Shown here in pieces: positions 4,391-52,111 of a DNA stretch of 64,000 nt. The DNA comes from Octopus sinensis. Lineage: Eukaryota. The position numbers and the translations under genes are program-made. Positions within the stretch are counted from its first letter, which is position 1. The number at the start of each line of letters is the position of its first letter. The stretch is taken from positions 2,976,001 to 3,040,000 of the forward strand of contig NC_043012.1 in assembly GCF_006345805.1 (NCBI RefSeq), read 5' to 3'. The notes under the pieces are model-generated. The model saw only the letters and a list, made by a program, of their open reading frames with translations. It had not been told where the DNA came from and did not search any database.

Positions 4391-5934
4391 CATCATCATC
4401 ATCATCATCATCATCGTTTAACGTCCGCTTTCCATGCTAGCATGGGTTGGACGGTTCAACTGGGGTCTGGCAAGCCCGAAGGCTGCACCAGGCCAGTCAG
4501 ATCTGGCAGTGTTTCTACAGCTTGATGCCCTTCCTAACGCCAACCACTCCGAGAGTGTAGTGGGTGATTTTATGTGCCACCGACACAGGTGCCAGACGAG
4601 GCTGGCAGACGGCCACGCTCGGATGGTGTTTTTTATGTGCCACCGACACAGTGCCAGACGAGGCTGGCTGACGGCCACGCTCGGATGGTGTTTTCTTATG
4701 TGTCACCGACACAGGTGCCAGACGGGGCTGGCGGACGGCCACGCTCGGATGGTGTTTGTTATGTGCCCTCAGCATGGAGGCCAGTCGTTGCGGTACTGGC
4801 TACGATCACGTTCGGATGGTTTTCTTATGTGCCACCGGCACTGGTACCACAAGGATACAAATTCCATTGATGTTCATCTATTTTGATTTGGTTCGATTTG
4901 ATTTGATTTGATTTGATTCGATTCTCACTTGCCTCAACAGGTCTTCACAAGTGTCACAAGAAGGAAGGTATGCACAGGTGGACTGACTACGTCCCAGGTA
5001 GGGGCCACGGATTATGGCTTCACTAGTCTTGCCGGGTCTTATCACGCACAGCATACTTCCATAGGTCTCGGTCTCTAGTCATTTCCATGGTGAGACCTAA
5101 CGTCCGAAGGTCGTGCTTCACCACTTCGTCCCAGGTTTCCTGGTCTACCTCTTCCACGGGTTCCCTCAACTGCTAGGGATTGGCACTTTCTCACACACCT
5201 ATCTTCATCCATTCTCGCCACATGACCATACCAGCGCAATCGTCTCTCTTGCACACAACAACTGATGCTTCTTACGTACAACATTTCTCTCAAGGTACTA
5301 ACGCTCTGTCGAGTAAGTACACTGACATTACACATCCATCAGAGCATACTGGCTTCGTTCCTCACAAGCTTACGCATGTCCTCAGCAGTCACGGCCCATG
5401 TTTCACTGCCATGTAGCATAGCTGTTCGTACACATGCATCATACAGTCTGCCTTTTACTCTGAGCGAGAGGCCTTTAGTCACCAGCAGAGGTAAGAGCTC
5501 CCTAAACTTTGCCCAGGCTATTCTTATTCTAGCAGTTACACTTTCAGCGCACCCGCCCCCACTACTGACTTGGTCACCTAGATAGCGGAAGCTATCAACT
5601 ACTTCTAGTTTTTTCCCCCCGGAAAGTGACGGAAGTTGTTTTCTGCAGATTTTCGGAGGTCAATGCTCCAGAGCATCTGCCACATACAAAAACTATCTTC
5701 CCAGTTAGCCTACCTTTGACATTGCTGCACCTCTTATGTGTCCATAGCTTACACTGGGTACATCTTATAGAGTTTCTACCTACACCTTTTCTACAGATCG
5801 AGCAGGGCCATCTTCCTGAGGATATTTGTGGATTTTCTAACTTTCTACTTATTAGTACTTTGGTTTTAGCTAGGTTGACTCTAAGGCCCCTCGATTCTAA
5901 ACCCTCCTTCCACACCTGGAACTTCTCCTCCAGT

Positions 5935-5936
<2 letters not shown>
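4391..5936 (-). mobile_element. 5'-truncated RTE-clade LINE: RT C-terminus, PHD-type Zn finger, 3' UTR with tandem units, (GAT)n tail
   Basis: Minus translation ELEEKFQVWKEGLESRGLRVNLAKTKVL...WPCSICRKGVGRNSIRCTQCKLWTHKRCS...VCGRC, then (+1 frameshift near 5610) LEVVDSFRYLGDQ...LYDACVRTAMLHGSETWAVT...ERRLRWYGHVARMDEDR...GRGRP. Tail AACCCATGCTAGCATGGAAAGCGGACGTTAAACGATGATG; both flanks are (AT)n. Frameshifts indicate a dead copy. Confidence 0.93.
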
Positions 5937-5981
<45 letters not shown>

Positions 5982-7383
5982 GAAAACACGCCTTGTGTCT
6001 CTAAGAATATTGCTTGGAGACACCTGCTTAGACTCATGTCTCCAATGCATGAAACTATTCGTAGCTTGTTTCTTTATACTGTATACATTAAATGATATTT
6101 ATCTCTCTGGATGGAGTATTTTTTTTTTGTGTTGATCTATCTGAATAGAAAAGTAAACTCTATGTATCTGTCTGTCTGCCTGTCTATCTGTTTGTCTATT
6201 TATCTTTGTCTATCGGTCTGTCTATTTGTCTATCTATCTATCCATTTGTCTGTCTATGTATGTATGTTTGTATGTATGTATGTATCTATCTATCTATCTG
6301 TCTGTCTGTCTATTTATTTGTCTCTCTGTCTGTCTATCTACTTGTCTACCTATCTATCTATTTATTTGTATATCTATCTATCTATCTATTTATCTATCTA
6401 TCTGTCTATCTCTCTATCTATCTGATAGATAGATAGATATAGGCCCAGGCATGGCTGTTTGGTTAAGAATCTGCTTCATAACTATGTGGTTTCATTGTAC
6501 AATAACTTGTGAGTGAATTTGGTAGACAAAAATTGTGTGTGTGTGTGCACGCGTGTGTGTCATGTCTTGACATCACAAGGTTTGTTTGGAAACCAGTAAG
6601 GGTTAACAACAGAAAGAGCACCCAACTATAGAAAATTTAACTCAACATTGAGACTGAAGTAATGGTGATGATAGGCGTAACCTGTGCGTGTGTAAATACC
6701 ATCCATAAGTTGCAAAGTAATTGAAGTTACTGTGCAACTTGCTGCTGCTGATAATGATGGTGGTGGTGGTGGTGGTGATACAGGGGGCATAACTCATTTA
6801 ATAATTACATTATATGTTACATTATACTGAGATGTTTGTAATAATATTACTGTGTAGCCCCGAGTCAGTTCTGATCGAGTAGACCTCTTGATCTAAGATG
6901 CTATAACTTTTACAATCTAGTCTATTATATATATATTCTCATGTGTTCTGCCCTCCCTTTTTAAGGTGATGGAATATGATTTGAGGGAGTTTTTTTGGAG
7001 CTATTTTTAGCAGGATTTGTGACTTGCGTATCAGTCCTCTCAGTGATTCAATATTTGATGTAATGTAACCGAAAGGTAGTAGGGTGTGGTGAAAGGACAG
7101 GTACAAAGCAAAATGCCACCTGTTCTACTAATACCAATATGTTATGAATCTCTTCCAACGGCAGCTGGCTTCCGTATTAAACAAGAATAGTGATGGTCGT
7201 GGTGGTGAAGATGGAAGTGGAGCTAGTGTTGGTGGTGATGGTCATGGTGATGAAGATGGTGATGCTTATGACGTTGTTGTTATTGGTAGTGGTGGTGGGA
7301 TATGTCAATCTGTTTCGTGTACTTTTATAAAGATTGCAAATTGCAACCTCCAAATATGTTGTTACCTGTTAAACACACCCCTG

Positions 7384-13225: not shown

Positions 13226-13461
13226 TTATGTTTTTGTTATGTATTTGTCTAAAGGCAGTGCTCCAGCATGACCGCAGTCAAATGACTGAAAAGAATAAAA
13301 GAGTATTAATGTAATAACAAGACATTGTTCACAATTTAATGTGCTATAGGTAGTTTGGAGCAAGTCCGTAGGGGTGGTCTTCGCCGGCAGGATGGTGATG
13401 AAAGAATGAAAATAAGTTGATTTTTGATTTATCGATTGAACAGTATTTTAATTTATTGCTT

Positions 13462-13802
13462 CAATTAGTTAGTTCTCTCTCTCTGTGCTATGAGGTACAT
13501 AAGGCCACAGCACAATCTCTCCAACCAGCTCTGTTTTCTACTATTGTTCTGATCTCATTCCAGTATCTCTACTCTTCTTGTCTCCTTTCTTTGTCCACGG
13601 TCCTTTGCCATGTGGTTTTAGGGCACCCTGTTGCTCTTTTCCCCTCAGGTTGCCACTTTAGTACCATCATACATTCCCAAATTGAGACAACAACAGCAGG
13701 CATCAACAGGATCAGTGATGAAATAAGACTCAGACACTGGAACTGGATCAGACGTGTCCTCAGACAAGATCCAGAATGCAATTGTATGGTGGCACTAAAG
13801 TG
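13462..13802. mobile_element. RTE LINE 3' fragment with inverted 5' part
   Basis: Minus 13462-13670: MVLKWQPEGKRATGCPKTTWQRTVDKE, followed by a 3' UTR and TAAC-type tail. Plus 13682-13802: RISDEIRLRHWNWIRRVLRQDPECNCMVALK, the segment that precedes it in RTE ORFs. Confidence 0.8.
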
Positions 13803-14002
13803 ACCATTTTAATTGCTTAGACGTTACTGTAATTAATAGCAACTATGTTGTTTAATTATAATAATTTCACTGTATTACCTTGATTTCTTTACCTTTGTGG
13901 GTGGGCATGGTTCATAGCCACCACACCCTGAATGGATGACGAAACTGAAGAAAGATTATTGAGTTGTAAATAATAATTTAAATAATGGAGTAATGAATTC
14001 TG

Positions 14003-14100
14003 TATTAACTTTTTGTATTTTCTTTATATTTTTCAGGTAAGTTGAATCTCTGATCAGTTGATAGTATGTGTTGGAGTAATGTGAACATCTCAAGGTGAGT
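14003..14100 (+). promoter_or_regulatory. Candidate recursive splice site plus 58-nt non-coding RS-exon (14037-14094)
   Basis: TATTAAC branch-like motif (14003-14009), poly-Y TTTTTGTATTTTCTTTATATTTTT, CAG (14034-14036) immediately followed by GTAAGT (14037-14042); a second donor AAG|GTGAGT at 14094/14095; stops in all three frames of the 58 nt. Confidence 0.6.
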
Positions 14101-14519
14101 CATTATGCTATACCAGGTAACATATAACACTATAGCTATTATTATGTCTTTACATTGCCAAATTATTCCAATGCTATGGAGTACAGCCTCTTATATATAT
14201 CTGGAGCATTGCACTTTTTTTTTCTGGTTATGTTACATTCAAACAAAAATAAAAAGAAGAAAAAGTAATCTGGTAATCTACCAAATTACAAAGTTTTCTC
14301 TTACAGACTCGTCAATCTTAAGGATCAGCTGTCAGGCAGTATTCAGTCTCTACCCTTATACTGATATCATAAGATTTTGCTCTGAAGAAACTTGTTGACT
14401 ATAACATAACTCTTTACATGCAGTCCTTCATTTTGAAAGATTGTAGATGTAACTTCTTTTATTGCTACAATAGTGTATACTACTATACTATATGGAGTAC
14501 CAATAATTCAGTGCTTATA

Positions 14520-14915
14520 ATCATCATCATCATCATCATCATCATAATCGGTTAATGTCCGCTTTTCATGCTGGCATGGGTTGGACGATTTGACTGAGGA
14601 CTGGCGAACCAGATGGCTGCACCAGGCTCCAATCTGATCTGGCAGAGTTTCTACAGCTGGATGCCATTCCTGATACCAACCACTCCAAGAGTGGGTGCTT
14701 TTACATGCCACCGGCAGTCAGGCGGTACTGGCAATGGCCATGCTCAAATGGTGTTTTTTATGTGCCATCTGCACAGGAGCCAGTCCAGCGGCCCTAGCAA
14801 TGACCTCGCTCAAATGTTTTTTCACATGCCACCGGCACAAATGCCAGTAAGGCAACGCTGGTAATGATCACACTCAAATGGTGCTTTTTACATGCCACCG
14901 GAATGGAACGTATCA
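14520..14915 (-). mobile_element. RTE 3'-tail element (family D: 5'-truncated RTE or RTE-tailed SINE)
   Basis: Same tail as 4391. Further copies at about 15060-15282(+), 15328-16249(-), 18422-19300(-), 19076-19258(+), 20617-21153(+), 22480-22745(-), 24395-24683(+), 24950-25375(-), 29860-30063(+), 37840-38415(-), 38435-38700(-), 38700-39001(+), 39008-39240(-), 40700-40880(-), 47270-47375(+), 61485-61570(-) and 63472-63656(+). Confidence 0.85.
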
Positions 14916-15560
14916 CTGGTAATTTATTATTACATTATATTGGTGTTGGTTGTATATCTAAAACACATGCACAGGCAACTTACAAATACAGTAGTCATAG
15001 AATAGATTAACTATATAAAGCGTCGCCTTACCTGTACATGAAAAACAAAATTCGAGCATGGTCATTGCAAGTGCCGCCAGACTGGCTCCCGTGCCAGTGA
15101 CACATAAAAGTACCCACTACACTCTCAAAGTGGTTGACGTTAGGAAGGTCATCCAGCTGTAGAAACCTTGCCATATCAGATTGAGCCTGGTGCAGCCTTC
15201 TGGCTCACCAGTCCTCAGTCAAACCATCCAACCCATGCCAGCATGGAAAGTAGACGTTAAACGACGACGATGATGATGATGAAACAAAAAGCATACATAT
15301 ACATGAAACAATATATACACACACAATCATCATCATCATCATCATCATCGTTTAACGTCCGTTCTCCATGCTAGCATGGGTTGGACGGTTCGACCGGGGA
15401 TCTGGAAAGCCAGAAGGCTGCACCAGGCTCCAGTCTAATCTGGCAGTGTTCTACAGCTGGATGCCCTTCCTAACACCACACCACTCCGTGAGTGTAGTGG
15501 GTGCTTTTTTACGTGCCACCTGCACAGGTGCCAGGCGAGGCTGGCAACGGCCACGGTCGG

Positions 15561-16249
15561 ATTGGTGTATTTTATGTGCCACCTGCACGGAAGCCAAACG
15601 AGGGGGTGGCATCGGCCACGAGTCGGATAGTGCTTTTTACGTACCACCAGACCAGGGATCCTGGCTGGTTCAATTCGATTTCGATTTCGCTTGCCCAACA
15701 TGTCTTCGCAAGCAAGGGGGTTGGCAGGGTGCCTGTCGTACGGTCAGATTGGTGTATTTTACGTGCCACCGGCACGGCAAGGAAGCCAGGCGAGGCGGCA
15801 CTGGCGGCCACGGCCACGAGTCGGATAGTGCTTTTTTATTTACGTTCCACCAGACCAGGGATCCTGGCTGTTTCAATTCGATTTCGATTTCGTTTTCGCT
15901 GCCCCAACATGTCTTCGCAAGCAAGGGGGTTGGCATGGGTGCCTGTCGTACGGTCAGATTGGTGTATTTTACATGCCACCGGCACGGAAGCCAGTGGAGG
16001 CATCGGCCACGAGTCGGATAGTGCTTTTTACGTACCACCAGACCAGGATCCTGGCTGGTTCAATTCGATTTCGCTTGCCCCAACATGTCTTCGCAAGCAA
16101 GGGGGTTGGCATGGGTGCCTGTCGTACGGTCAGATTGGTGTATTTTACGTGCCACCGGCACGGAAGCCAGTGGAGGCGGCGCTGGCATCGGCCACGAGTC
16201 GGATAGTGCTTTTTACGTACCACCAGACCAGGGATCCTGGCTGGTTCAA
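15561..16249 (-). repeat. Higher-order tandem repeat, about 3.6 units of 175-210 bp, inside an RTE-tail element
   Basis: Units start at ATTGGTGTATTTTA at 15561, 15748, 15958 and 16133; unusually GC/CpG-rich and nearly identical. Confidence 0.9.
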
Positions 16250-16834
16250 TACAAAATGATGACTACACCTTTTGAATCTCTTATTGCTTTTTAAGCATTT
16301 TGATTCAATAGACTAATGGTGGATCAATGAAATTGTACCTAAGTTCAATAAGATACCCTATGCTGAATTGTCTATGTGCTAAATTGTCATGTTACGATAC
16401 TATATATTACTACTATACTATATACTACTGTGAAGGTGCATGGCTCAGTGGTTAGAGCATTGGGCTCACAATCATGAGGTAGTGAGTTCAATTCCCTGAC
16501 CAGGGTGTGTGTTGTGTCCTTGAGCAAGACACTTTATTTCACATTGCTCCAGCTCACTCAGCTGGTGCCAAGCTGTATCAGCCTTTGCCTTTCCCTTGGA
16601 TAACATCAGTGGTGTGGAGAACGGAGGCTGGTATGCATGGGCAGCTGTTGGTCTTCTATAAACAACCTTGCCTGTACTTGTGTCTCAGAAGGTAACTTTC
16701 TTGGTGCAGTCCCATGGTCATTCATGACTGAAGGGGTCTTCTTCTATATGCTACTGTAAATGCCATTTATTCATACATCATGTTAACCACTCTACTCCAC
16801 CTCATTTGTACCTCTGCTCTTCCAATACTTAGTT

Positions 16835-18390: not shown

Positions 18391-19470
18391 TGTCTTTACA
18401 ACCGATATATATATATATATATCATCATCATCATCATCATTTAACGTCCGCTTTCCATGCTAGCATGGGTTGGACGGTTCGACTGGGGTCTGGGAAGCCA
18501 GGAGGCTGCACTAGGCCCAGTCAGATCTGACAGTGTTTCTACAACTGGATGTCCTTCCTTACGCCAACCACTCCGTGAATGTAGTGGGTGCTTTTTACGT
18601 GCCACTGGCACAGGTACCAGGCGAGGCTGGCAATGGCCATGATCAGTTGGTGCTTTTTACGTGCCACCGGCATGAGGCCAGTCGAGGCGGTGCTGGCAAC
18701 GGCCACGTTCGGACGGTTCTTTTATGTGCCACCGGCACTGGTATCACAACTGCAATTTCCATTGATTTTTGATCGATTTTGATTTTGATTTCACTTGCCT
18801 CAACAGGTCTTCGCAAGCAGAGTTTTGTGTCCCAAGAAGGAAAGGTATGCATAAGTGGACTGGCTACATCCCAGGTAGAGGCCACGGTTTATGGTCTCAC
18901 TTGTCCTGCCGGGTCTTCTCAAATGGTCTCACTTGTCCGCCGGGTCTTCTCACGCAACAGCATACTTCCAAAGGTCTCAGTCACTAGTCATTTCCTCAGT
19001 AGACCTAATGTTCGAAGGTCATGCTTCACACCCACCTCGTCCCAGGTTTTCCTGGGTCTCCCTCTTCCATCCGATCGTGGCACATAAAAAGCACCCACTA
19101 CGCCCACGGAGTGGTTGGCGTTAGGAAGGGCATCCAGCCGTAGAAACATTGCCAGATCAGACTGGGCCTGGTGCAGCCTTCTGGCTTCCCAGACCACAGT
19201 TGAACCGTCCAACCCATGCTAGCATGGAAAGCGGACGCTAAACGATGATGATGATGATCTTCATCCATTTTCGCCACATGACCATACCAGCGCAATCATA
19301 TACATATATATATACACATGTATATATATATTTGTATATTCTTAACATGTAGAGGTAGGTTCAAATACAAAATATGCTGGACACTGTAGTGTATGCCTTA
19401 AGAGAATAACTTCTCCCTTTTAGACAACAGTATGTTCAATATGCTCATCTCATTGGTGCATGGCATATTC

Positions 19471-19505
<35 letters not shown>

Positions 19506-19524
19506 TGCAGACCATGAGAGGATA

Positions 19525-20437
19525 ATTCCATTGTCCATGCTGGCATGGGTTGGACAGTTTGACTAGGGCTGGTAAGCTGACAGGCTGCACCAGACTCCAG
19601 TCTTATTTGACATGGTTTCTCTGGCTGAATGCCCTTCCTAACACCAACCACTCCAAGAGTGTAATGGGTGCTTTTACATGCCACTGATTCCATTGTTTGA
19701 CACCAGTATCTGCCATGACTGCAATTTCACTTGGTTTAATGGGTCTTCTTCTCAAGCACAGCGTATTGCCAAAGGTCTTGGTCATTTGTCATTGCCTCCA
19801 TGAGGCCCAATGTTCAAAAGGTGCTTTTTACGTAACACCAGCATCGACCATAACTATGATTTCACTTAGCTTGACAGGTCTTCTCAAGCATAGAATGCCG
19901 CCAAAGGCCTTGGTCACTAATCGTTGCTTCCATGAGGCCCAACATTCAAAGATCATGTTTCACCACCTTATCCCATGTCTTTCTGGGTCTACCTCTACCA
20001 TAGTTTCCCTCCACTGAGATTGGCACTTCTTTACACAGCTTTCCTTGTCCATAAGTATCACATGATCATACCAGCACAGTCATCACTCTTGCACAACACA
20101 TCTGTTGCCTCTTATGCCCAACTTTCCTCTCAAGATGCTTACACTTGTCATATATGCCCACTGACATTCCATATCCAACAAAGCATTCTAACTTCATTTT
20201 TTTCAAGCCTACGCATATCCTCGGTGGTCACTGCCCATGTTTCACTGCCGTGCAGCATAGCTGCTCGCATGCAGGCATCATACAGTCTGCCTTTCTGCCT
20301 GAGGGAGAGGCCATTTGTTGCCTACAGAGGTAGGAGCTCTCTGAACTTTACCCAGCCTATTCTTATTCTCACAGCTATGCCCTCAGAGCATCTACCTCTG
20401 CTACTGGCTTGGTCACCTAGATAATAGAAGCTATCCA
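19525..20437 (-). mobile_element. Older 5'-truncated RTE LINE, same family as 4391-5936
   Basis: Minus translation DSFYYLGDQ...RIGWVKFRELLPL*...KGRLYDACMRAAMLHGSETWAVT; tail at about 19525. The plus ORF 19975-20424 is its antisense. Confidence 0.88.
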
Positions 20438-20616: not shown

Positions 20617-20975
20617 TGGCCGTTTGCCAGCCTCATCTGGCACCTATGTCGGTGGCACATAAAAACACCATCCGAGCGTGGCCGTCTGCCAGCCTCGTCT
20701 GGCACCTGTGTCGGTGGCACATAAAAACACCATCCGAGCGTGGCCATCTGCCAGCCTCGTCTGGCACCTGTGTCGGTGGCACATAAAAAACACCATCCGA
20801 GCGTGGCCGTCTGCCAGCCTCGTCTGGCACCTGTGTCGGTGGCACATAAAAAACACCATCCGAGCGTGGCCGTTTGCCAGCCTCGTCTGGCACCTGTGTC
20901 GGTGGCACATAAAAACACCATCCGAGCGTGGCCGTTTGCCAGCCTCGTCTGGCACCTGTGTCGGTGGCACATAAA
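20617..20975 (+). repeat. Six tandem 62-63-bp units in an RTE 3' UTR
   Basis: Unit TGGCCGTCTGCCAGCCTCGTCTGGCACCTGTGTCGGTGGCACATAAAAACACCATCCGAGCG starts at 20617, 20679, 20741, 20804, 20867 and 20929. Confidence 0.95.
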
Positions 20976-21651
20976 TCACCCACTACACTCGGAGTGGTTG
21001 GCGTTAGGAAGGGCATCCAGCTGTAGAAACACTGCCAGATCTGACTGACTGGACTGGTGCAGCTTTCGGGCTCCCCAGACCCCAGTTGAACCGTCCAACC
21101 CATGCTAGCATGGAAAGCGGACGTTAAATGATGATGATGATGATGATGATGATTTTCACTGATAATTCCGGATTCACAATTATTTACCAACTTATTCTTT
21201 CATCTTGTTCTCATGTTTTCACATCTGTTGAGAAGGAAGTCCAATTATTTGGGATGGGAGTGTCTTGCACATGAGTAAACTTAGCCAAGAGTTACATTAT
21301 TTAATGCATTTTAGAATTAAATTTCAATTTAAGTAGACACTGAGATTTTTGTTGTGTAGACCTACATGGCATACATGTAGCCAGCTGGATAAGACTAGGT
21401 GCAACCTACAGATGTGTTGTTTCAGATATACCAACTGATCTGTATGGAGAGGAAAGAGGAAACTAGCTGAAGAATTTGATAGCATGTAGTTTCTGTTGTA
21501 TTTATAGTGTGGCTTTTTATTATGGTTAAGAAGTTTGCTTCACAACTGTATAGTTTCAGGTCCAACTTCACTCAGCACAGCATCTAAGGCAAGCATCTAC
21601 TATCATAGCCTTGGATGACTACAATCTTGTGAATAAAATTCAATAGATTCA

Positions 21652-23499: not shown

Positions 23500-23510
23500 C
23501 GATACGACGT

Positions 23511-23551
<41 letters not shown>

Positions 23552-24733
23552 AACGACGACGATAAAAAAAAAAATTTAGGATTATTGTGTATTTGATGAA
23601 AATATTGTCCAACCCCTTAAAAGAAACTAAACTACAAGTGAGCCAACAAACAATAGAGCTGCTGTAGTTGACCTACTAGATGTAGCAGCCAAAATCTTTC
23701 TCCCAAATCACTCTGACTCATTTTAAAAAAAGAAACCTTTGCCTTTCTTTTGGATAACATCAGTGGCATGGAGAGCGGGAGCTGGTATGCATAGGCAACT
23801 GGTGGTCTTGCCTGGATTTGTGCCTCAGAGGGTAACTTTCTTAATATGTAATCCCCTAGTCATTCATGACCAAAGAGGATCTTTTTTTTTTTTATATCAT
23901 GGTATCACAGTATCAACCAGACTGTCTGATGTTGTTACACATTGCTGGTCACAATGCACATCACATTGTTTCAGCTTTCGAATGATACCACCCTGCTTAC
24001 CTAGCCAGCAGGGTGGCATTCCCCTCTGTTCGGAACACTATTCCATCGCAGGGTTACTCATTTACAGCTGGGTGGACTGGAACAATGTGAAGTGAAGTGT
24101 TTTGCTCAAGAATACAACACACTACCCAGTTCAGAAATTGAACTCACAATCTAGCAACCATGAGGGCAACACCCTAACCACTAGGCCATACAGCACATTG
24201 TAGCAGCACACCTGTCTCTATCCTCATTCTCAATTACTCTAACCCCCCCCATCTGGTCTGGGTAACCATGTACCTCCTCTACAGTAAGAAACCTGTTTCT
24301 CTCTCTGTGTCTCACCATTCCCTTTCATAATCTGACACATGATCCCCTCCTCCAATGCCCCTTCCCCTCTCAAAGAACCTTTGTCTTGCAAATTACTTGG
24401 TGACCCTGCTAGTACTGCTGCCATGTAAAAAGCGTCCACTCCACACTGTAGAGTGGTTGGCATTTGGAAGGGCATTCAGCTGTAAAAACCATGCCAAAAC
24501 TGACCTCACCAGTGCTGGTGCCATGTAAAAAGCAGTCAGTTCACTCTGTGGGGTAGTTGGTGTTAGGAAGGGCATCCAGCCATAAAAACCCTGCCAAAAC
24601 AGAGACAGAAGTTTAGTGCAAGCTCCTGCCTGGCCGGCTCAATGCCAGCATGGTTAGCAGATGTTAAATGATGATGATGATGATATATAAATACACGTGC
24701 TCATCTCTCTCTCTCTCTCCTCTCTCTCTCTAT

Positions 24734-30073: not shown

Positions 30074-30801
30074 CATATTTAACTTGCTTACTTCTCATTT
30101 TCTTACCTTTTTTTACAACTATGGTGTATCACTCTTTCTTTTGTGCACATAACCTGTTGGAAGTGCAGATGACTATCTCCAGAAGCCTACCCCACAAGCT
30201 CATCTCTCCACCTCTTATCACCCATACTTTCTTCCAACCCCAGACCTGCACTAACCACTTTCTGCGACCCTTCATCCACAAAATGTCAACCTTCAGAACC
30301 CCCTTCCTGTCCATGTTTTTCCTGCAGTCATTGACACTTAGCAGATGCTGAAGATGAGCATCAACTGCATCAGTGTAACCAGTCTTAGAGGCCTTGTCTA
30401 TTATTTGTTCAGAGAAAAATACCTTTAGTCCATTAACACATGTACACTGTAGGCAGAATACTTCCACAAGATTTACCTCTTCCAGTGACTGTATCACATT
30501 GGGAGGAAATCCTGTGGCCTGAAGCTCATAGCTACTCATTTAGTTGGTTAATCTGTCCTGAGTAAATTGGTGTACCTTACTGAAAAGCACAGTTTCTTGG
30601 AGTCCTAATATATTCTTACATACCATTGTTTGCCTATGGACCCCTGGAGTCCTAATATATTCTTACATACCATTTTTTTCCTGTGGACCCTTTCTGGAGA
30701 TAGTCATATGCACTTCCAACAGGTATGTACACAACACAAAGAGTGATACAGCATAGTAGTGAAACATGGTAAGAAAACTAGAAGTAACCAAGTTAAATAT
30801 G
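30074..30801. repeat. About 110-bp inverted repeat with about 500-bp spacer
   Basis: 30074-30184 is the reverse complement of 30692-30801 with scattered mismatches (e.g. CCTGTTGGAAGTGCA.ATGACTATCTCCAGAA / TTCTGGAGATAGTCAT.TGCACTTCCAACAGG). Confidence 0.9.
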
Positions 30802-31545: not shown

Positions 31546-31930
31546 CATCCTCATCATTGTTCGGCCGTGGTCGAGACAATGGAATTTACTATGTTATGCC
31601 AGACTTCACGGTCCATCATAGCATTACGGAGGTCCTGTTGCTGGATGCCTGTATCCCTGGAGATTACATCAGGGTAGGAGAGTGTGCGCCCTCTGGTATT
31701 CCAGAGGAGAAGAGGAGAAATTACTTCTTTCTCAGCTCTACAACAATGTCCAGCAAACTGGACTCTCCTACCTTTCACAAGAGATGACACAGGTGGTAAT
31801 TTCCCATATATTTGCATTTTGGTTGGATGGCGCTTCCACGAGAGATTTTGAGCTCTCATAAGGAGGCAAGTGTAGGTTCCATCCAACCGCCTCTCAAGCT
31901 TCTTTGATAACGTCCAGGTTTCTGAGCCAT
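31546..31930 (-). mobile_element. 5'-truncated RTE-type LINE (third family) with 8-bp TSD
   Basis: YGSETWTLSKKLERRLDGTYTCLLMRAQNLSWKRHPT...RRVQFAGHC...DREVW; GATGAGGATGAT tail; AGGTGGAT at 31538-31545 and 31931-31938. Confidence 0.88.
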
Positions 31931-32444
31931 AGGTGGATGGGAATGTATGGAAGGCAGGAAGAGAATGAATGTGAGTTTTGAAACTTGAAAGGATTAAAAG
32001 TTAATTTCAATATCAAAATATGTAAGGGAGGGGAAAAAATAATGTGTGAGTAGAACAAACCTATATCTCTCCTTTAACCTTCATATATACTTTTGTTGAA
32101 AGATCAATCCCTTGCAATCACTGACCCTATTTAACCCAGTTCTTCAATAACAGCTATGGGATAAAGATTAAGGCTCTGAATGTCTTGTCTTAATCCTTAC
32201 AAATACGTTAATATTATACCAAAAGTCTTTGGGTTTATTTTTGTTTTTTTTTCTCATACTCGTGTTTTCTCCTTCTAAGTCTCAGTTTTTCTACTCCCTA
32301 CCCCTCTCCCTCGTTTTAATCTGTCTCTACAAAAATGGACTAAACATTCCAACAGTCTGTTTTGTAACCCCCCCTCTCCAACTTCTTCCCACTTGTTAAT
32401 ACTCTTGGAGTAGCCCAGATCGCTTATACAATTTTCTTCATCTT

Positions 32445-32533
32445 TGTATGTATATATATGTACATATGTGCATGGGTATATAAATGTGTGTGTATGTACG
32501 TACGTGTGTTTGTTTATGTATTATGTGTGTGTG

Positions 32534-32593
<60 letters not shown>

Positions 32594-32635
32594 ATATGAT
32601 GTATGTATATATGTATGTATGTATATGTATGTATG

Positions 32636-32669
<34 letters not shown>

Positions 32670-33110
32670 TATATGTATGTATGTATTATGTAGTATGTAT
32701 GTATATATGTATGTATGTATATATGTATGTATGTATGTATGTATATATGTATGTATGTATGTATATATGTATGTATATATGTATATGTATGTATATATGT
32801 ATGTATGTATATGTATATATATGTATGTATATAGATATATATATGTATAAATATATCTATATACATATGTATATGTATGTGTATATTTACATATATATAT
32901 ATATATATGTATTATATATATGTATATGTATGTGTATATATACATATATGTATTATATATACATATATGTGTATATATATACATGTATATGTATGTATAT
33001 ATATATATATATATACGTATATATGTATGTATATATATATATATCCATATATATGTATGTATATATATATCTATATATACATATATGTATGTATGTGGAT
33101 ATGTGTGTTG
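32445..33110. repeat. Very long (TA)/(TATG)/(TG) microsatellite field (second field about 34330-35060)
   Basis: Read directly; source of the YIYI/MYVC ORFs. Confidence 0.95.
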
Positions 33111-33235
33111 GGAGGGGTGTATGTATGTGTGTATGCTTCTCTTTAATTCTATGGACATTTGAAGTTTGACCAGCTGCTTATGTTAGCTTTTGTATATCTT
33201 TTAGTCGTATCAGCTATTGATTCATTCTTCCTTAG

Positions 33236-34343: not shown

Positions 34344-34431
<88 letters not shown>

Positions 34432-34607
34432 GTGTGTATGTATATATGTATATGTGTGTATGTATATATGTATATGTGTGTATGTATATATGTATATGTG
34501 TGTATGTATATATGTATATGTGTGTATATATATTATGCATGTATATATATGTATGTATGTATATATATGTATGTATGTATTTATGTATATATATGTATAT
34601 ATGTATG

Positions 34608-34640
<33 letters not shown>

Positions 34641-34690
34641 GTATGTATGTATATATATGTATATAGTATATATATATATGTATATATGTA

Positions 34691-34744
<54 letters not shown>

Positions 34745-34988
34745 ATTTGTGTGTGTGTGTGTTTATAAATGCTTCTCTGACCTTTTCTTTCAATATACAC
34801 CAAATATGCTCATCTGCATATTTGCACAGTGCTTACAAAATAACAAGTTTGAGTGTGTTGTGTGTGTGTATACACATCCTCGACACCCACCCAACTTCAC
34901 CTTATTTACACAAAAATGTTGTTCTTGTCGGTGAACCATGTAGGACACACACAGCATGCACACCTATCATGTACATACACATACATAC

Positions 34989-37316: not shown

Positions 37317-40300
37317 TATATACACATTCTTTATTTTCTCTCCTTGCTTCTTTCTGTGTTCCTTTCTGTGGAGGAGCATAGGCTCAAAACATTAAAGACT
37401 TTTTCACTTCCCAAGAGTTAAACTAATACATCTGCTTGTTGTCTACACCACCTGTCTTCGTCTTTTGTTGTTGTTTTTTTATAAATTCTCCTTATATATA
37501 CTCTTTTATTTGTTTCAGTCATTTGACTGTGGCCATGCTGGAGCACCGCCTTTAGTCAAGCAAATCGACCCCAGGACTTATTCTGTTGGTCTCTTTTGCC
37601 GAACTGCTCAGTTACATGGATGTAAACACACCAGCATTGGTTGTTAAGCAATGTTGGTGAGGACAAACACAGACACACAAACATATACACACACAAACAT
37701 ATACACACACATACATATATATATGACAGGCTTCTTTTAGTTTCCATCTACGAAATCCACTCACAAGGCTTTGGTTGGCCTGAGGCTATAGTAGAAGACA
37801 CTTGCCCAAGGTACCACACAGTGGGACTGAACCCAGGCTCTAATCTGATCTGGCAGAGATTCTACAGCTGGATGCCCTTCCTAACGCCAACCACTCTGAA
37901 AGTGTAGTGGGTGCTTTAACATGCCACTGGCACGAGAGCCAGTCAAGTGGTACTGGCAACGACCATGCTCAAATGGTGTTTCTTATGTGCCACCTCCACA
38001 GGAGCCAATCCAGCGGCACTGGCAATGACCTCACTCGAATGTTTTTCACATTCCACCGGCACAAGTGCCAGTAAGGTGACGCTGGTAACAATCACGTTTG
38101 AATGATGCTTTTTACGTGCCACTGGCATGGAAGCGACTTAGCTGCTCTACCAGCAATCAGTTAGCTGCTCTAGTTGCTTGTATGGTGCCAGTCATCGAAT
38201 TTGCAAATTTGATTTGATTTTGATTTCACTTGCCTCAACAGGTCTTCGCAAGCAGAGTTTAGTGTCCAATGAAGGAAAGGTATGCATAAGTGGGCTGGTT
38301 ACACCCCTGGCATAGGCCACGGGTTATAGTCTCACTTGGCTTGCTGGGTCTTCTCACGCACTGGATATTTCCAAAGGTCTCTGTCACTAGTCATTGCCTC
38401 GGTGAGGCCTAATGTTCGAAATATATATATATATCATATCATCTTCATTATTTAATGTCAGTTTTCAATGCTGGCATGGTTTGGCTAGTTTGATAGGAGG
38501 AGCTGACTAGTCAGAGGGTCATTTGTTTTGGCATGGTTTCTAAGGTTGGATGCCTTTCTAATACCAATCACTTTACAGAGTACACTGGGTGTCGTTTATG
38601 TGGAACCAGCACAGGTGTTTTTTTTTACATGGTGTTGGCACAAGTGGTTTGTATGTGGCACCAGCATGGGTGCTGTTGACATGGTGCTGGCACGGGTGCT
38701 TTTTATGTAGTGTTGGCACGGCCAATGCCAGTGCCGCCCCGACTGGCTTCAGTGCCGGTGGCACATTAGAAAGCACCAACCAATCATGGCCGATGCCAGA
38801 CTCCCCTGGCACCTGTGCCGGTGGCACGTAAAAAGCACCCACTACACTCGCGGAGTGGTTGGTGTTAGGAAGGGCATCCAGCTGTAGAAACACTGCCAGA
38901 TCAGACTGGAGCTTGGTGCAGCCCCTGGCTTCCCAGACCCCGGTCGAACCGTCTAACCCATGCCAGCATGGAAAACGGACGTTAAACGATGATGATGATG
39001 ATATATGTCATCGTCATTTAATGTCTGTTGTCCTTGCTGGCATGTGTTGGACAGACTCCAGTCTGATTTGGCATGGTTTCTAGGGCTGGATACCTTTCCT
39101 GGCACAAACCACTTTACAGAGTGTACTGGGTACTTTTAATGTGGCACCACACAGGCGCTTTTACATGGTGCTGCACAGCTGCTTTAATGTAGCATTGCAT
39201 GCACACTTTTACATGGCACTGCCACAAGTACTTTTCACCACTAGAGGGACCAATCTTAAATACTTCTGCTGTGAAGTACAGGTCTTGAGTATGTTGTGTC
39301 TCTTGTGCTTACAAACAGATGTATAACTGCTACTGTTAAGGTTAGAGCTCCATGTAGATTATCATCCAGTCTGCTTCCAGTAAAGTAGTTTGGTTACTAT
39401 TATATCCACTAGTATTACTAGTTATGATATCAGAGCATATGTAAGAGAAATTGCAATAAACACAAGTTTATATTATTAGTTCCTATGTACGTTTCACCTC
39501 TATGGTAGTTGTTAGGAATTCTGCATCTGATATTCCAAATGCAATTGGATACTTAAGCGCAATAGGTCACCAAGGAAAATTTTATTACATTACTAGCTGG
39601 CCCCGTGCCATTAAGAATGACAACTAATTCTAGTATTTTATATATAAATATGGATGGTAAATCAAATTGATACACTTGTCAATGTTATCTAGAGGTTGTC
39701 TTTTGAGACATGACATCAATCATCGTTTGTTACTGAAAGAATGCTGGTTCATGCATAACATTGACATACGTCCCTTGTACACGCCCACACATACACACAT
39801 ATACTAACACGCAGTTGAAACGCTGTTTGATTTTTCTTTTTAGCATTGAATATTCACCATCCCGCTTCCATTGCACACACACACACACACACACACAAGC
39901 AAACATTCACATAGCTCCCTTTTACATGCACACACATACTCACTCAAGAGTTGAAACGCTGTTTGATTTTTTTCACCCCTTCCTTATTCATATGTTGTGA
40001 CGGAGAAAAACGCAAGAGTAGTATTATAATAGATGTTACAGAGAATAAGCACAGGCATAGCTGTATGGTAAAAAGTTTATTTCTGAACCACATGATTCCA
40101 GGTTCAGTTCCTCTGCATGGTACCTTTGGCAAGTGTCTTCTATAAGCACAGGCCAACCAAAGCCTTGCGAGTAAATTTGGCAGACAAAAGCTGAAAGAAG
40201 CCCACTATGTGTGTATGTATGTGTATCGTCTGTGTTCTCCTCCCCATGCTTGACAACTTATGCTGGTGTTTTTTCCTTCCCATAACTTAGTGGTTCAGTA

Positions 40301-42469
40301 AAAGTGACTGACAGAATAAGTACCAGACTTTAAAAAAATTATTGGGGTTAATTCATTCGACTAAAATCTTTCAAGGTGTTACTCCAGCATGAACACAGTT
40401 GAATGACTGAAATGGGCAAAAGACAAAGAACTAATCAGGAAACTAATTAGTTCTCTGTAACAAAACGCAACAAAATGTTCCTTGATAGTCTGTTCTCGTT
40501 AAGCATCCAATTACACATGGAACATCTAATGCAGTGTTTCAAACAACCACAATGGTGAAACATATGTAGGAACAAGTTTTATAAACTTGTGTTTATCATA
40601 ATTTCTCATATTTGAGATAATGAATCTCAGATAAAGCTATAACTAATAGCATGTAAAGATTGGGTTAAAAATCCTTTTTAATACAAGAAGTCCTCCTCCT
40701 CATCATCATTTAATATCTGTTTTCCATGCTGGCATGGGTTGGACAGTTTGACAGGACCCAGCAGGGTTGCATCAAACTCCAGTGTCAGTTTTGGCTTGGT
40801 TTCTATAGCTAGTTACCCTTCCTAATGCCAACTACTTCACAGTGTGTACTGGGTACTTTTTGTGTACTACTGGCACTAGTGAGGTTACCAAGTTATCTTG
40901 TGAGGCAAGAAAGAACAAGAAATAAGGAAAAGGTAAAGGAAAAAGCCTCCTTGGCTAAAAGGGGATGGAGTAGTCTTTGAGGGAAGGGCTTATGCAAGTT
41001 TTTGAGAGGCTAAAGTATGAGCGATTAATAAGCCTAGGTGTCTTGCTGTAGAGGAGATACATGGCTACTCCACATCATGTAAGGATGGATGGAGGTAGCT
41101 GGAATGAAGATAGAGATTGCAGTGATGAGATACTTTAGTGTCTCAAGATACAAGAAGGTGAGAGAGACAAGTGGGTCAGAAAGTAGAGGGATGATGTGCA
41201 AGGTGTAGGAGCAGTGGAGAGGGAGATGTAGAAGGAACTACAGTAAGCAAGGAATGATGGCTGAAATGAGAGGGCATTGAGAATGACAGCAAATATGAGA
41301 GGTGTTAAAATGGAATATGAGGGAGGAGAGAGAGTGGTGGTCTGGAGGCACAGAAAAAGGTAATCAGTGAAAATAGTGTAGGTAGGGATGTTGAAGGTAA
41401 GGGAAAGATGGAATTGATTCCAGTTGGGTGCTAACTGGAAGCGCAAAGGTGTAGATTCTGCTCTCAAATGATTACAGCGGCTAAGTAGTATCATAGAGAG
41501 AGAAGTGATGGGTGTTAGGGGATGAAATGTGAGGAATGCAGGACAGGCAAAAAGAGTGGCAGGGCAGTGTCCTCCATCACACACACACACACAAACATAA
41601 CCAGGGAGGTTTTAAGACATCATTTAAATTGCTGTGGTGAACAGATTTTCTCAGGCGCAATGAATCACTAATCATCTCAGTCTTTCTCATCATCTCGTCT
41701 GTAAGGCTCCGTAACTCGAGATCAGCTTTCACTTCTTTGTCCCATATTTTCCTGGGTCTCCTTCATCCACTTTCAGCAACTGGCACTCCTTTATGAAAAT
41801 GACCTTGTTCTTGTGTATCATATGATCAAACCAGTGCAGTCTTCTCTCTTGCACATTACATGTAGTTCTGCTTATGTCTACTTTCTTTCAATATATTAAC
41901 ACTTTGTCACACCACACACTCATATAGTGTGTATGTGGGTTTGTTTTTTTGACAAATGTACTGAGATATCACTTTTAAAAGTTTAGCTGAAAATATTGAA
42001 GCCAGTGCCTATTTCAGCCTGATAGTTAATTTGTTTGCTGAGCCACTACATTATGTGGCATATAAAGATACAACACAACAAAAGATACTTGCTTATGGTA
42101 CTACTCAGTTGAATTGAACCCAGAACCATGCTGTTGTGAAGTAAACTCGTTAACCACACTGTCATGTCTGCAATTGTGTGTGTGTGTGTGGAATAAATAG
42201 ATTGACTTGTACATTATATGTGAAACACAAAATTAGAATATGAGAGCGACCTTTCAGATATCTTGTGAATTTATGTAAGCATAACAGTAAGTCTCTAGTA
42301 AAACCAGCTGATCCTCAACGATGATTGGTCAAATCAGTTGTTATTGGTCTTAGTGAATCACACAGTTGAAATTATTGCAAGCCCTAAATTAAACTGCTGA
42401 GAAGTAAGAGAAAAGTTCCATCAAAGTTTCTGTTCAATAGAGGTTGTTCACTGGTATGATTTGCAGTTA

Positions 42470-47499: not shown

Positions 47500-48090
47500 A
47501 TGAAACAATAACCTGCATGTCCGCATTCCTGATACTCAGACACCCTACACATCCTGCTCTCTATTACATTCTCATATATTATATCATATCCACAAATTAT
47601 TTTTCTCACGGTCTCTTTCCTTTTACCATTAGTAGTGTTAAGTCTTCTTTCTACATCCCCAAATTCCAGTACCCCAGTCATTTCCCTCCCCACTGTCCAC
47701 CAACCTTTATGAGATTTTCTTGTCCTGAAGTTGTTGAATAATTTCAATCAGTTCAGCACTAAAGAACCTATACATGGCACAGAGCCAACACTGCATATAC
47801 TTGGTTCAATTCTTATAATCAACACAGTGGATATTCCTTGTTCTAAGTTGATTTAGCTCCATGGTCTATATTCCTTTCTGCAGTGGACTAATTATTTGCA
47901 ATTTCAGGTGCATATTAGTAAGAGTATTAAAAATGTGGATATCTTTTTACCAATTGACCATAAGCACCACTGCATCTCAGGTTCTTGGCAATTGCACAGC
48001 ATAAACATTATTGAATTTCTACTGGCTCCATTCCTACAAACTGAACAAGACCAATTTCCGGCTATTGTTGTTGTTCTGTGAGTAACTGGA
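47500..48090 (-). mobile_element. Highly decayed RTE fragment (PHD-bearing family)
   Basis: NWSCSVCRNGASRNSIMFMLC resembles RWPCSICRKGVGRNSIRCTQC of the 4391-5936 copy. Confidence 0.5.
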
Positions 48091-51469: not shown

Positions 51470-51840
51470 CTGCTGCATTCACTCAGGGTGTGTTGAACCA
51501 ACTCCAGTCATTGAGTTTACCACATCCCTCATGAATGCTGGCCACACCCAGTGGTCAACTACAGTCGAAGTTGTAATGGATACTGACCTGCTCTTCTACA
51601 GCCAAAGACCATAGATGTGGGTGACCCAGTTGTACTTCCACCCTTTACCATTGCTAGCCATGTCTCCAATTGTCCTACAGCTTGTTTGCACCAGCCTGGG
51701 TGAGGAACTAGGTTGACCGCCCTGTGAATGAATTCCCCCAGATGTTGATGGAGAGTATAGCCAAGCCACCTTAGATGTCTTTTGAGTGGAGTTTGTTGCA
51801 GAAAGTTGATGCAGCAGTCTTGTCTTATTTCAGGATTCAA
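51470..51840 (-). mobile_element. RTE LINE 3' fragment (second family)
   Basis: RHLRWLGYTL...PHPGWCKQAVGQLETWLAMVK...VFGCRR, then in another frame VSITTSTVVDHWVWPAFMRDVVNSMTGVGSTHPE*. Confidence 0.8.
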
Positions 51841-52111
51841 AATGAAGTCTGATTGACAAATACACAGAATTTGACATAGATTGGTTGTAGGTTAGTTACT
51901 TTCAAGGAAAACCTGGATAAAAAAAAAAAAATTCCCTGAGTGTGAGAGTATTGTATATGTCCGGCAAGAAATACAATAGGGATGGCAGTAGAAAGAGGAA
52001 GAGTAGCAGCAAGTGAAGTGAGGGGGAAGAAGAAACAGTGACTAAATATTTAGTTGAGAGTAAGAAGAGCCTATGTTTATGGTCCTTGTGGATCTTTGTA
52101 GACTCGACTAC

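What the first reader, a model, noticed from the sequence alone, without database searches (positions are those of the whole stretch)
14003..14100. Recursive splice site (ratchet point) with a poison RS-exon in a probable cephalopod long intron
A strong acceptor (branch-like TATTAAC, 24-nt poly-Y, CAG) is fused with zero spacing to a consensus donor GTAAGT, and a second consensus donor (AAG|GTGAGT) lies 58 nt downstream. The intervening 58 nt have stops in all frames. This is the architecture of recursive sites and RS-exons described in Drosophila and in long vertebrate neural genes. I am not aware of recursive splicing being characterised in cephalopods. No coding exon is evident for tens of kb on either side, which fits a giant intron removed stepwise.
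Basis: partly seen in the sequence, partly recalled or inferred. Interest (0 to 1): 0.72.

Follow-up and report, generated by a model that had tools for sequence, protein, structure and literature searches.

The report
Candidate recursive splice site, octopus DNA
A short stretch of octopus non-coding DNA has the exact sequence layout of a "recursive" splice site used to remove giant introns in steps, but no RNA or cross-species data could be reached, so it stays a good candidate that may equally be a chance motif.

Summary
A branch-point-like TATTAAC, a pyrimidine-rich tract and CAG are fused directly to GTAAGT at 14036|14037. A second donor, AAG|GTGAGT, lies 58 nt downstream, and the 58 nt have stops in all frames. 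This is the strongest fused acceptor|donor of 426 AGGT sites in the window. The two donors are the two best of 7,830 GT sites on both strands. Two null models give about 0.03 fusions and about 0.0025 full architectures per 64-kb window. That is rare locally but implies roughly 100 chance copies in an octopus-sized genome.

The DNA is octopus-lineage. The site sits in a 700-bp unique island and is not part of the adjacent LINE or SINEs. No exon was detected anywhere in the window. Indirect strand clues favour + strand transcription: T>A and C>G skew over 1–40 kb, and 7 of 7 LINE insertions antisense.

Every sequence-level criterion of a ratchet point with a cryptic RS-exon is met. The decisive criteria (RNA evidence, conservation, host intron) could not be tested. 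My estimates are about 0.42 that the site is really used, about 0.40 that it is an unused chance motif, and about 0.10 that it is an ordinary non-coding exon. If real, it is a new member of a known kind. Interest is moderate.

The parts
14003..14009 (+). Branch-point-like TATTAAC (yUnAy match TTAAC; branch A at 14008, 28 nt upstream of the acceptor AG)
   Evidence: Sequence. It lies inside the 44-nt AG-free zone.
14010..14033 (+). Pyrimidine-rich tract, 20/24 Y, ending in TTTTT with TT at -5/-6
   Evidence: Y fraction 0.80 over -23..-4. TT at -5/-6 is found in 99.5% of fly ratchet points (10.1101/006163).
14034..14042 (+). Fused acceptor|donor CAG|GTAAGT (junction 14036|14037): the candidate ratchet point
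   Evidence: Top of 426 AGGT sites at 19.6 bits. Best donor of 7,830 GT sites at 12.7 bits.
14037..14094 (+). 58-nt candidate cryptic RS-exon: stops in all frames, length not a multiple of 3
   Evidence: No protein homolog in any frame.
14092..14100 (+). Second donor AAG|GTGAGT (candidate RS-exon 5' splice site), slightly weaker than the ratchet-point donor
   Evidence: It scores 12.1 bits, second best in the window.
13572..13803 (-). Context, left boundary: decayed LINE inserted on the - strand with an inverted 5' piece (twin-priming pattern). Its right edge at ~13803 puts the site outside the LINE.
   Evidence: ORFs. The joined pieces align without gaps to LINE ORF2 tails (P0094, E=3e-6).
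14515..16250 (.). Context, right boundary: cluster of a high-copy SINE-like repeat. The 13,810-14,515 island between the two TEs is unique.
   Evidence: Self-BLAST. No hit of 13,306-14,515 to the O. vulgaris locus L001.

Best explanation
It is a sequence-competent recursive splice site (ratchet point) with a 58-nt cryptic RS-exon, on the + strand of octopus non-coding DNA that is probably intronic. Proposed mechanism (inferred, not shown): when + strand pre-mRNA is made, U2AF/U2 recognise the branch point, Y-tract and CAG, while U1 on the GTGAGT at 14095 defines the 58-nt exon. The upstream exon is spliced to 14037, which regenerates a consensus 5' splice site (exon end|GTAAGT). This site outcompetes the slightly weaker 14095 donor, so the 58 nt and the rest of the intron are removed in a second step and leave no trace in the mRNA. 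If the regenerated donor lost the competition, the out-of-frame, stop-containing 58 nt would be included and the transcript would be expected to undergo NMD. Shown: the motifs, their strength and rank, uniqueness of the locus, and octopus origin. Inferred: + strand transcription, actual use, and any selection on the site. My sub-estimate that it is a conserved, selected ratchet point is about 0.3.
For: The motif is exact and the strongest in the window. The chance expectation for the architecture is 0.0024-0.003 per window. Every published sequence feature is met: fused SA|SD with a strong Y-tract and TT at -5/-6; a cryptic RS-exon of ~50 nt that is out of frame, with its own downstream donor <100 nt away; and a ratchet-point donor at least as strong as the RS-exon donor (12.7 vs 12.1 bits; intronic part 9.2 vs 8.7). 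The site is not TE-derived: it is unique in the window and absent from an O. vulgaris sample locus, and it lies outside the twin-primed LINE. Context fits a long + strand intron. No exon or domain was found in 64 kb. In unique sequence T>A is 7-18% in 19 of 20 2-kb bins over 1-40 kb, and C>G is 5-11% over 8-40 kb, the sign seen on the sense strand of fly introns (PMC5786239). All 7 LINE insertions are antisense to the + strand (two-sided p about 0.016).
Against: There is no RNA evidence, no cross-species conservation data and no identified host gene; none of these was reachable. About 100 chance instances are expected per octopus-sized genome, so the verdict depends on the unknown number of true ratchet points in cephalopods. 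In vertebrates only ~10 efficient intronic sites were defined, against 197-539 in flies. The strand clues are uncalibrated for octopus (one search was inconclusive) and are not independent of each other, because antisense LINE debris could produce the T>A skew and the AATAAA asymmetry. The AATAAA asymmetry is not specific. The skew stops at ~40 kb, whereas antisense LINEs continue to 52 kb. No second comparably strong fused site exists on the + strand in 64 kb. The Y-tract is interrupted by 4 purines. TE insertions lie 230 nt upstream and 420 nt downstream.
Confidence: 0.42

Rival explanations
1. It is a fortuitous juxtaposition of splice-like motifs in neutrally evolving, repeat-rich DNA that is never used, either because the + strand is not transcribed here or because the site is ignored or silenced like most pseudo-exons.
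For: Null models predict ~0.0024-0.003 such architectures per 64-kb window, hence ~100-130 per ~2.7-Gb genome, and ~1,200 simple Y-tract+AG|GTRAGT fusions. The finding was picked by eye from a window, so it is exactly the kind of instance chance supplies. There is no transcript, homolog or related sequence for the locus in any collection searched. The local RNA structure is unremarkable (z = +1.6). The neighbourhood is TE-riddled. The strand hints are indirect and uncalibrated.
Against: Three rare features coincide in one place: the best acceptor-fused donor, the two top-ranked donors of 7,830 sites placed 58 nt apart on the same strand, and a clean branch point with an AG-exclusion zone. LINE orientation (7/7) and the skew both point to + strand transcription. 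In that case a perfect site would be hard for the spliceosome to ignore.
Confidence: 0.4
2. It is an ordinary 58-nt non-coding exon (5'-UTR, lncRNA or regulated poison cassette exon) that uses the acceptor at 14036 and the donor at 14095. The GTAAGT at its start is incidental, or is repressed as in annotated RS-exons.
For: A strong acceptor and a strong donor lie 58 nt apart. Thousands of annotated vertebrate exons begin with a 5'ss-like sequence and are nevertheless included because the EJC represses the regenerated site (PMC6224609). Stops in all frames are compatible with a UTR, lncRNA or poison exon.
Against: A perfect GTAAGT at an exon start is rare, and strong regenerated donors drive skipping even with the EJC present. 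No transcript-derived or annotated sequence matches the segment. My rough base-rate estimate is only a few such exons per genome with all three signals this strong, against ~100 chance sites.
Confidence: 0.1
3. It is part of a transposable element (the 3' end of the neighbouring LINE, or a low-copy repeat) that carries splice-like motifs by descent.
For: LINE ORF2-tail remnants lie 230 nt upstream and a SINE cluster lies 420 nt downstream. 43% of the window is repeated within itself.
Against: 13,306-14,515 has no other copy in the window or in a 21-kb O. vulgaris sample that shares 173 repeat HSPs with the window. The LINE is a - strand, twin-primed insertion whose right edge is at ~13,803, so the site is flanking DNA. 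There is no protein homology in any frame. A low-copy family cannot be excluded without a whole genome.
Confidence: 0.04

Closest known systems
Drosophila intronic ratchet points with cryptic RS-exons (Ubx, kuz, Bx, luna; Burnette 2005, Duff 2015, Joseph 2018/2021, Pai 2018)
   Same: Fused (Y)nTTnCAG|GTAAGT motif, TT at -5/-6, a short (~50 nt) out-of-frame cryptic exon with its own donor <100 nt downstream, a ratchet-point donor stronger than the RS-exon donor, and a setting with no exons nearby (searches compared).
   Different: Fly sites are defined by saw-tooth RNA-seq, junction and lariat reads and by ultraconservation of the motif. None of these is available here. The host here is a lophotrochozoan with a ~20-fold larger, TE-rich genome, so the chance background is far higher than in flies.
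Vertebrate recursive splice sites in long neuronal genes (Sibley et al. 2015; e.g. CADM2, from my own knowledge and as cited)
   Same: The RS-exon model: exon definition through the downstream donor, competition between the regenerated 5'ss and the RS-exon 5'ss, and a PTC-containing RS-exon if included.
   Different: Only ~10 efficient intronic sites were defined in human. They are deeply conserved and lie in genes >150 kb (my own knowledge). Gene identity, intron size and conservation are unknown here.
Annotated RS-exons repressed by the exon junction complex (Blazquez et al. 2018, PMC6224609)
   Same: An exon that begins with a 5'ss-like GT... sequence flanked by a normal acceptor and donor.
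   Different: Those exons are included in mRNA and are mostly coding and constitutive. This 58-nt segment is non-coding, and its regenerated donor would be a perfect consensus, which favours skipping.
Intronic pseudo-exons / decoy splice sites
   Same: Good-looking acceptor-donor pairs in non-coding DNA are common by chance. About 6 Y-rich-acceptor plus GTRAGT pairs are expected per window from the counts.
   Different: Pseudo-exons do not normally start with a perfect donor fused to the acceptor. That fusion is the rare element here (0.03 per window).

Membership tests
Recursive splice site (ratchet point) with cryptic RS-exon | [quoted passage not shown] | tested here: met
   tttttcag|GTAAGT at 14036|14037. 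Rank 1 of 426 AGGT sites at 19.6 bits. Best donor of 7,830 GT sites.
Recursive splice site (ratchet point) with cryptic RS-exon | TT at positions -5/-6 of the acceptor (99.5% of fly ratchet points) | tested here: met
   Positions 14031-14032 are TT. The criterion comes from 10.1101/006163.
Recursive splice site (ratchet point) with cryptic RS-exon | Usable branch point and AG-exclusion zone upstream of the acceptor | tested here: met
   TATTAAC has its branch A 28 nt upstream, and there is no AG for 44 nt. This is motif-level only; no lariat data.
Recursive splice site (ratchet point) with cryptic RS-exon | A second 5' splice site <100 nt downstream that defines a short (~50 nt) cryptic RS-exon | tested here: met
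   AAG|GTGAGT lies 58 nt downstream and scores 12.1 bits, second best in the window. Criterion.
Recursive splice site (ratchet point) with cryptic RS-exon | RS-exon content non-coding or out of frame (PTC if included) | tested here: met
   Stops in all three frames, 58 mod 3 = 1. No homolog in any frame.
Recursive splice site (ratchet point) with cryptic RS-exon | Ratchet-point donor stronger than the RS-exon donor, so that the RS-exon is skipped | tested here: met
   12.7 vs 12.1 bits; intronic part 9.2 vs 8.7. The margin is small, and the exonic part of the regenerated site depends on the unknown upstream exon.
Recursive splice site (ratchet point) with cryptic RS-exon | Located on the sense strand inside a long intron (>11 kb in flies; much longer in vertebrates) | tested here: inconclusive
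   No exon was found in 64 kb (the packed Pfam scans miss weak hits). The + strand is favoured by the T>A/C>G skew and by 7/7 antisense LINEs. The host gene is not identified and the calibration failed.
Recursive splice site (ratchet point) with cryptic RS-exon | Motif conserved across species well above flanking intronic AG|GT sites | not testable with these tools
   No cephalopod genome collection can be searched by DNA. Protein-route and exact-pattern searches found no related locus.
Recursive splice site (ratchet point) with cryptic RS-exon | RNA evidence: saw-tooth read density, exon-to-ratchet-point junction reads, lariats to and from the site | not testable with these tools
Recursive splice site (ratchet point) with cryptic RS-exon | Mutation of the ratchet-point donor causes inclusion of the RS-exon | not testable with these tools
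   This is an experimental criterion (PMC8605326).
Ordinary cassette / UTR / lncRNA exon | Present in mature RNA, spliced at both ends | not testable with these tools
   No transcript data. No called protein or ORF matches the segment.
Transposable-element-derived sequence | Multiple dispersed copies, or continuity with an adjacent TE | tested here: not met
   Unique in the window and absent from L001. The LINE ends at ~13,803. Low-copy families are not excluded.

The most novel reading that the evidence does not exclude
This is a genuine, selected ratchet point with a cryptic RS-exon in a giant intron of an octopus gene. It would be the first recursive splice site described in a lophotrochozoan. 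It would imply that stepwise removal of long introns through cryptic RS-exons is ancestral to bilaterians (or at least shared by protostomes), rather than a fly speciality alongside a handful of vertebrate cases. It would also imply that cephalopod giant genes depend on it.
Probability: 0.3. Interest if true: 0.55.

Novelty: new member of a known kind. Interest (0 to 1): 0.36.

Why it matters
Recursive splicing has been characterised only in insects and vertebrates. Its two known regimes differ: hundreds of cryptic RS-exons in flies, against about ten efficient intronic sites plus thousands of EJC-repressed annotated RS-exons in mammals. Cephalopods are protostomes with vertebrate-sized, intron-rich genomes and large nervous systems, so they can show which regime is ancestral and whether giant introns generally need ratchet points. 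One motif cannot settle that. It does provide a concrete locus to test, and it suggests a simple genome-wide test: sense versus antisense excess of the fused motif in long octopus introns. If the site is only a chance motif, it illustrates how many perfect-looking ratchet points a multi-gigabase genome produces by chance (~100).

Tried and rejected
(1) Exact look-ups of the ORFs flanking the site (14105-14398, 13417-13803) and of the ten longest window ORFs: none is in the collection.
(2) Six-frame pseudo-protein of 13,810-14,510, and a 3.7-kaa pseudo-protein of unique ORFs from 9.3-20.5 kb: no homologs. The second search also missed the LINE ORFs it contained, so long X-spaced queries are insensitive.
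(3) Pfam on all unique ORFs >=40 aa packed into four pseudo-proteins: 0 families. The positive control (LINE PHD finger, E=2.8e-5 when scanned alone) was missed in the pack, so only strong domains are excluded.
(5) Exhaustive HMMER on the best unique ORF, 30132-30539(-): no homolog.
(6) Rfam and tRNA scans: nothing.
(7) AATAAA depletion on the + strand as a poly(A)-signal signature: rejected as not specific relative to other A5T hexamers.
(8) CpG o/e as a gene-body marker: uniform at ~0.2, uninformative.
(9) Calibration of the skew on the one annotated octopus gene fragment available (L001 1-5012): inconclusive.
(10) RNA fold of the site: less stable than shuffles, no structure.
(11) Exact 26-mer scan of metagenome contigs: 0 hits.
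(12) The bacterial promoter/terminator scan is irrelevant to this eukaryotic DNA.
(13) The reading that the site is the 3' end of the upstream LINE: rejected by the twin-priming geometry.

Full report
OBSERVATION. The sequence is exactly as described. TATTAAC is at 14003-14009. A pyrimidine-rich tract occupies 14010-14033 (20 of 24 Y, so not a pure poly-Y). CAG at 14034-14036 is fused with no spacer to GTAAGT at 14037-14042. AAG|GTGAGT is at 14092-14094|14095-14100. The 58 nt between the two donors (14037-14094) contain stop codons in all three frames, and their length is not a multiple of three.

IS IT MORE THAN CHANCE? On both strands of the window there are only three AGGTRAGT octamers, and two of them are this pair. 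I scored all 426 AGGT sites with a simple joint acceptor+donor PWM. The 14036 site is first at 19.6 bits, and the runner-up has 12.9. Of 7,830 GT dinucleotides on both strands, only two score >=12 bits as donors. They are 14037 (12.7) and 14095 (12.1), 58 nt apart on the same strand. Three hundred block-wise dinucleotide shuffles give 0.033 Y-rich AG|GTRAGT fusions and 0.003 full architectures (fusion plus a second GTRAGT 20-206 nt downstream) per window. A factorised null built from real-sequence counts gives 0.028 and 0.0024. The architecture is thus locally rare (p about 0.003). Scaled to an octopus-sized genome (~2.7 Gb, my own knowledge; ~42,000 windows), about 100-130 such architectures and ~1,200 simple fusions are expected by chance. 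Motif statistics alone cannot decide the question.

WHAT SURROUNDS IT. The window is AT-rich (about 39% G+C), and 43% of it is repeated within itself. It contains no Rfam family and no tRNA. The DNA is octopus-lineage. A clean conceptual translation of the best LINE copy (4.9-6.05 kb, - strand) has as its closest named relatives an Octopus vulgaris protein (82% identity) and an O. bimaculoides protein (79%), against ~50% for cnidarian and other copies. The window also shares 173 repeat HSPs, with LINE identity 85% over 1.3 kb and SINE identity up to 95%, with a random 21-kb O. vulgaris locus (L001, GCA_951406725.2).

The candidate site lies in a ~700-bp island (13,810-14,515) that is unique within the window and has no match in L001. 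On its right is a cluster of a high-copy SINE-like repeat (14,515-16,250). On its left are LINE ORF2-tail remnants on both strands. When the + strand piece (13,705-13,803, '...RLRHWNWIRRVLRQDPECNCMVALK') is joined to the - strand piece (13,690 down to 13,572, 'WQPEGKRATGCPKTTWQRTV...'), the product aligns collinearly and without gaps to LINE ORF2 tails (P0094, 60 aa, E=3e-6). This is the geometry of a twin-primed (5'-inverted) LINE inserted on the - strand, with its right edge at ~13,803. The candidate site is therefore flanking DNA and not the LINE's 3' end.

IS IT IN A + STRAND INTRON? No exon was found. The six-frame translation of the island has no homolog among 5.8 billion clusters, and neither do the unique ORFs from 9.3-20.5 kb. 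No window ORF is a called gene. Pfam finds nothing in the unique ORFs >=40 aa of the whole window or in the nine most coding-like ORFs scanned singly. The best unique ORF (30132-30539, - strand) has no homolog among 1.84 billion representatives. Two caveats apply. The packed Pfam scans missed a PHD finger that scores E=2.8e-5 when its ORF is scanned alone, so they exclude only strong hits. One search likewise missed the LINE ORFs it contained.

Absence of exons fits both a giant intron and intergenic DNA, so I looked for strand asymmetries. In unique, non-microsatellite sequence the + strand has a T>A excess of 7-18%. It is positive in 19 of 20 2-kb bins from 1 to 40 kb and falls to ~0 from 40 to 64 kb. 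A C>G excess of 5-11% runs over 8-40 kb. T>A together with C>G is the sign reported for the sense strand of Drosophila introns (PMC5786239). T>A on the sense strand is also the mammalian pattern (Touchon et al. 2003/2004, my own knowledge; paper not held).

All LINE insertions detected are on the - strand, that is, antisense to + strand transcription: 5.0-6.2, 13.3-13.8, 18.9-20.4, 31.6-32.0, 41.6-41.9, 47.9-48.1 and 51.6-51.9 kb. This is 7 of 7, two-sided p about 0.016. AATAAA is 36 (+) against 90 (-), but that is not significantly beyond other A5T hexamers. These clues all point to + strand transcription. They are not independent, because antisense LINE debris would itself make the + strand T-rich. 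They could not be calibrated on octopus genes, since only 5 kb of genic DNA was available (inconclusive). The skew break at 40 kb is also not mirrored by LINE orientation. I take them as moderate support, with a likelihood ratio of roughly 3-4, for a + strand transcription unit.

COMPARISON WITH WHAT DEFINES RECURSIVE SITES. From the primary literature, ratchet points are fused acceptor|donor motifs with a prominent Y-tract, and 99.5% have TT at -5/-6. They lie in long introns (11-133 kb in flies) and are far more conserved than other intronic AG|GT sites. They are supported by saw-tooth read density, exon-to-ratchet-point junction reads and lariats (10.1101/006163; PMC6110457). [quoted passage not shown] The ratchet-point donor normally outcompetes that donor, and mutating the ratchet-point donor forces RS-exon inclusion (PMC8605326; PMC6224609). 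The criteria that actually establish membership (RNA evidence, conservation, and residence in a defined long intron) could not be tested.

WEIGHING. The posterior depends on how many true ratchet points octopus has with this strict architecture, relative to ~100 chance copies. Flies have 197-539 sites. Humans have ~10 efficient intronic ones plus thousands of repressed annotated RS-exons. Octopus is unknown. The second donor (8.7% by chance, against 'most' real sites) and the strand clues each shift the odds a few-fold toward a real site. My estimates:
- about 0.42 that the site is used recursively in + strand pre-mRNA (about 0.3 that it is a selected, conserved ratchet point);
- about 0.40 that it is an unused chance motif;
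- about 0.10 that it is an ordinary non-coding exon whose GTAAGT start is incidental;
- about 0.04 that it is TE-derived.
This is close to a coin flip between the first two. I give the recursive-site mechanism as the best explanation, while stressing that only the sequence anatomy is shown.

NOVELTY AND INTEREST. If real, the site would be a new member of a known kind in a new lineage. It would be useful for asking whether the fly-type abundance of cryptic RS-exons is ancestral, but it would not surprise a splicing specialist. The most informative follow-ups are computational and cheap: locate the window in an annotated assembly; inspect total RNA-seq for junctions, saw-tooth and lariats; check octopod conservation; and test genome-wide for a sense-strand excess of the fused motif in long introns.

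Noticed in passing
window 1-40000 vs 40001-64000: In unique, non-microsatellite sequence the + strand carries a sustained T>A excess (7-18%, positive in 19 of 20 2-kb bins) and a C>G excess (8-40 kb). Both stop abruptly at ~40 kb. This could mark a transcription-unit or other domain boundary. Nothing recognisable sits at the break; a lone + strand AATAAA is at 39455.
   Followed up: partly
window 4990-6152, 13572-13803, 18925-20435, 31557-32000, 41580-41887, 47907-48098, 51562-51891: All seven LINE ORF2-derived fragments are on the - strand (two-sided p about 0.016). This orientation bias extends beyond the 40-kb skew break.
   Followed up: partly
window 13572-13803: The LINE remnant has the geometry of a twin-primed (5'-inverted) insertion. 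The + strand piece ends at the same ORF2 position ('MVALK') at which the - strand piece begins ('MVLKW...'), and the joined pieces align without gaps to LINE tails.
   Followed up: yes
window 14515-16250; also 4400-4890, 18400-19350, 20617-21190, 37833-39147 and others: A high-copy SINE-like family with an internal 62-66-bp tandem repeat (for example 20617-20975: 5.8 copies at 97%) occurs in both orientations and forms an inverted cluster just downstream of the site. It gives long spurious ORFs ('MLAWVGRFD...').
   Followed up: no
window 15032 (- strand): The second-ranked fused acceptor|donor in the window is cag|GTAAGG on the - strand, between SINE copies. Its pyrimidine tract is weak (3'ss 1.4 bits; total 12.9).
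   Followed up: no
whole window: CpG is strongly and uniformly depleted in unique sequence (o/e 0.17-0.44, mean ~0.2) while GpC is near 1. There is no CpG island; the apparent peaks are repeats, such as (ACG)n at 23504-23562.
   Followed up: no
window 32487-33135 and 34377-34746: Very long compound (TGTA)n/(TATA)n microsatellite blocks (650 and 370 bp) produce 130-265-aa spurious ORFs on both strands.
   Followed up: no
L001 1-5012 (O. vulgaris OX597814.1:48558987-48563998): The O. vulgaris locus fetched through the LINE protein lies next to the 3' part of a nuclear-receptor gene (zf-C4 + Hormone_recep, 731-aa product). It is unrelated to the finding.
   Followed up: no
method: Packing many ORFs into one X-spaced pseudo-protein lowers sensitivity. 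A PHD finger found at E=2.8e-5 in a single ORF was missed inside a 4.9-kaa pack, and LINE ORFs with hundreds of homologs gave no hit inside a 3.7-kaa query.
   Followed up: yes
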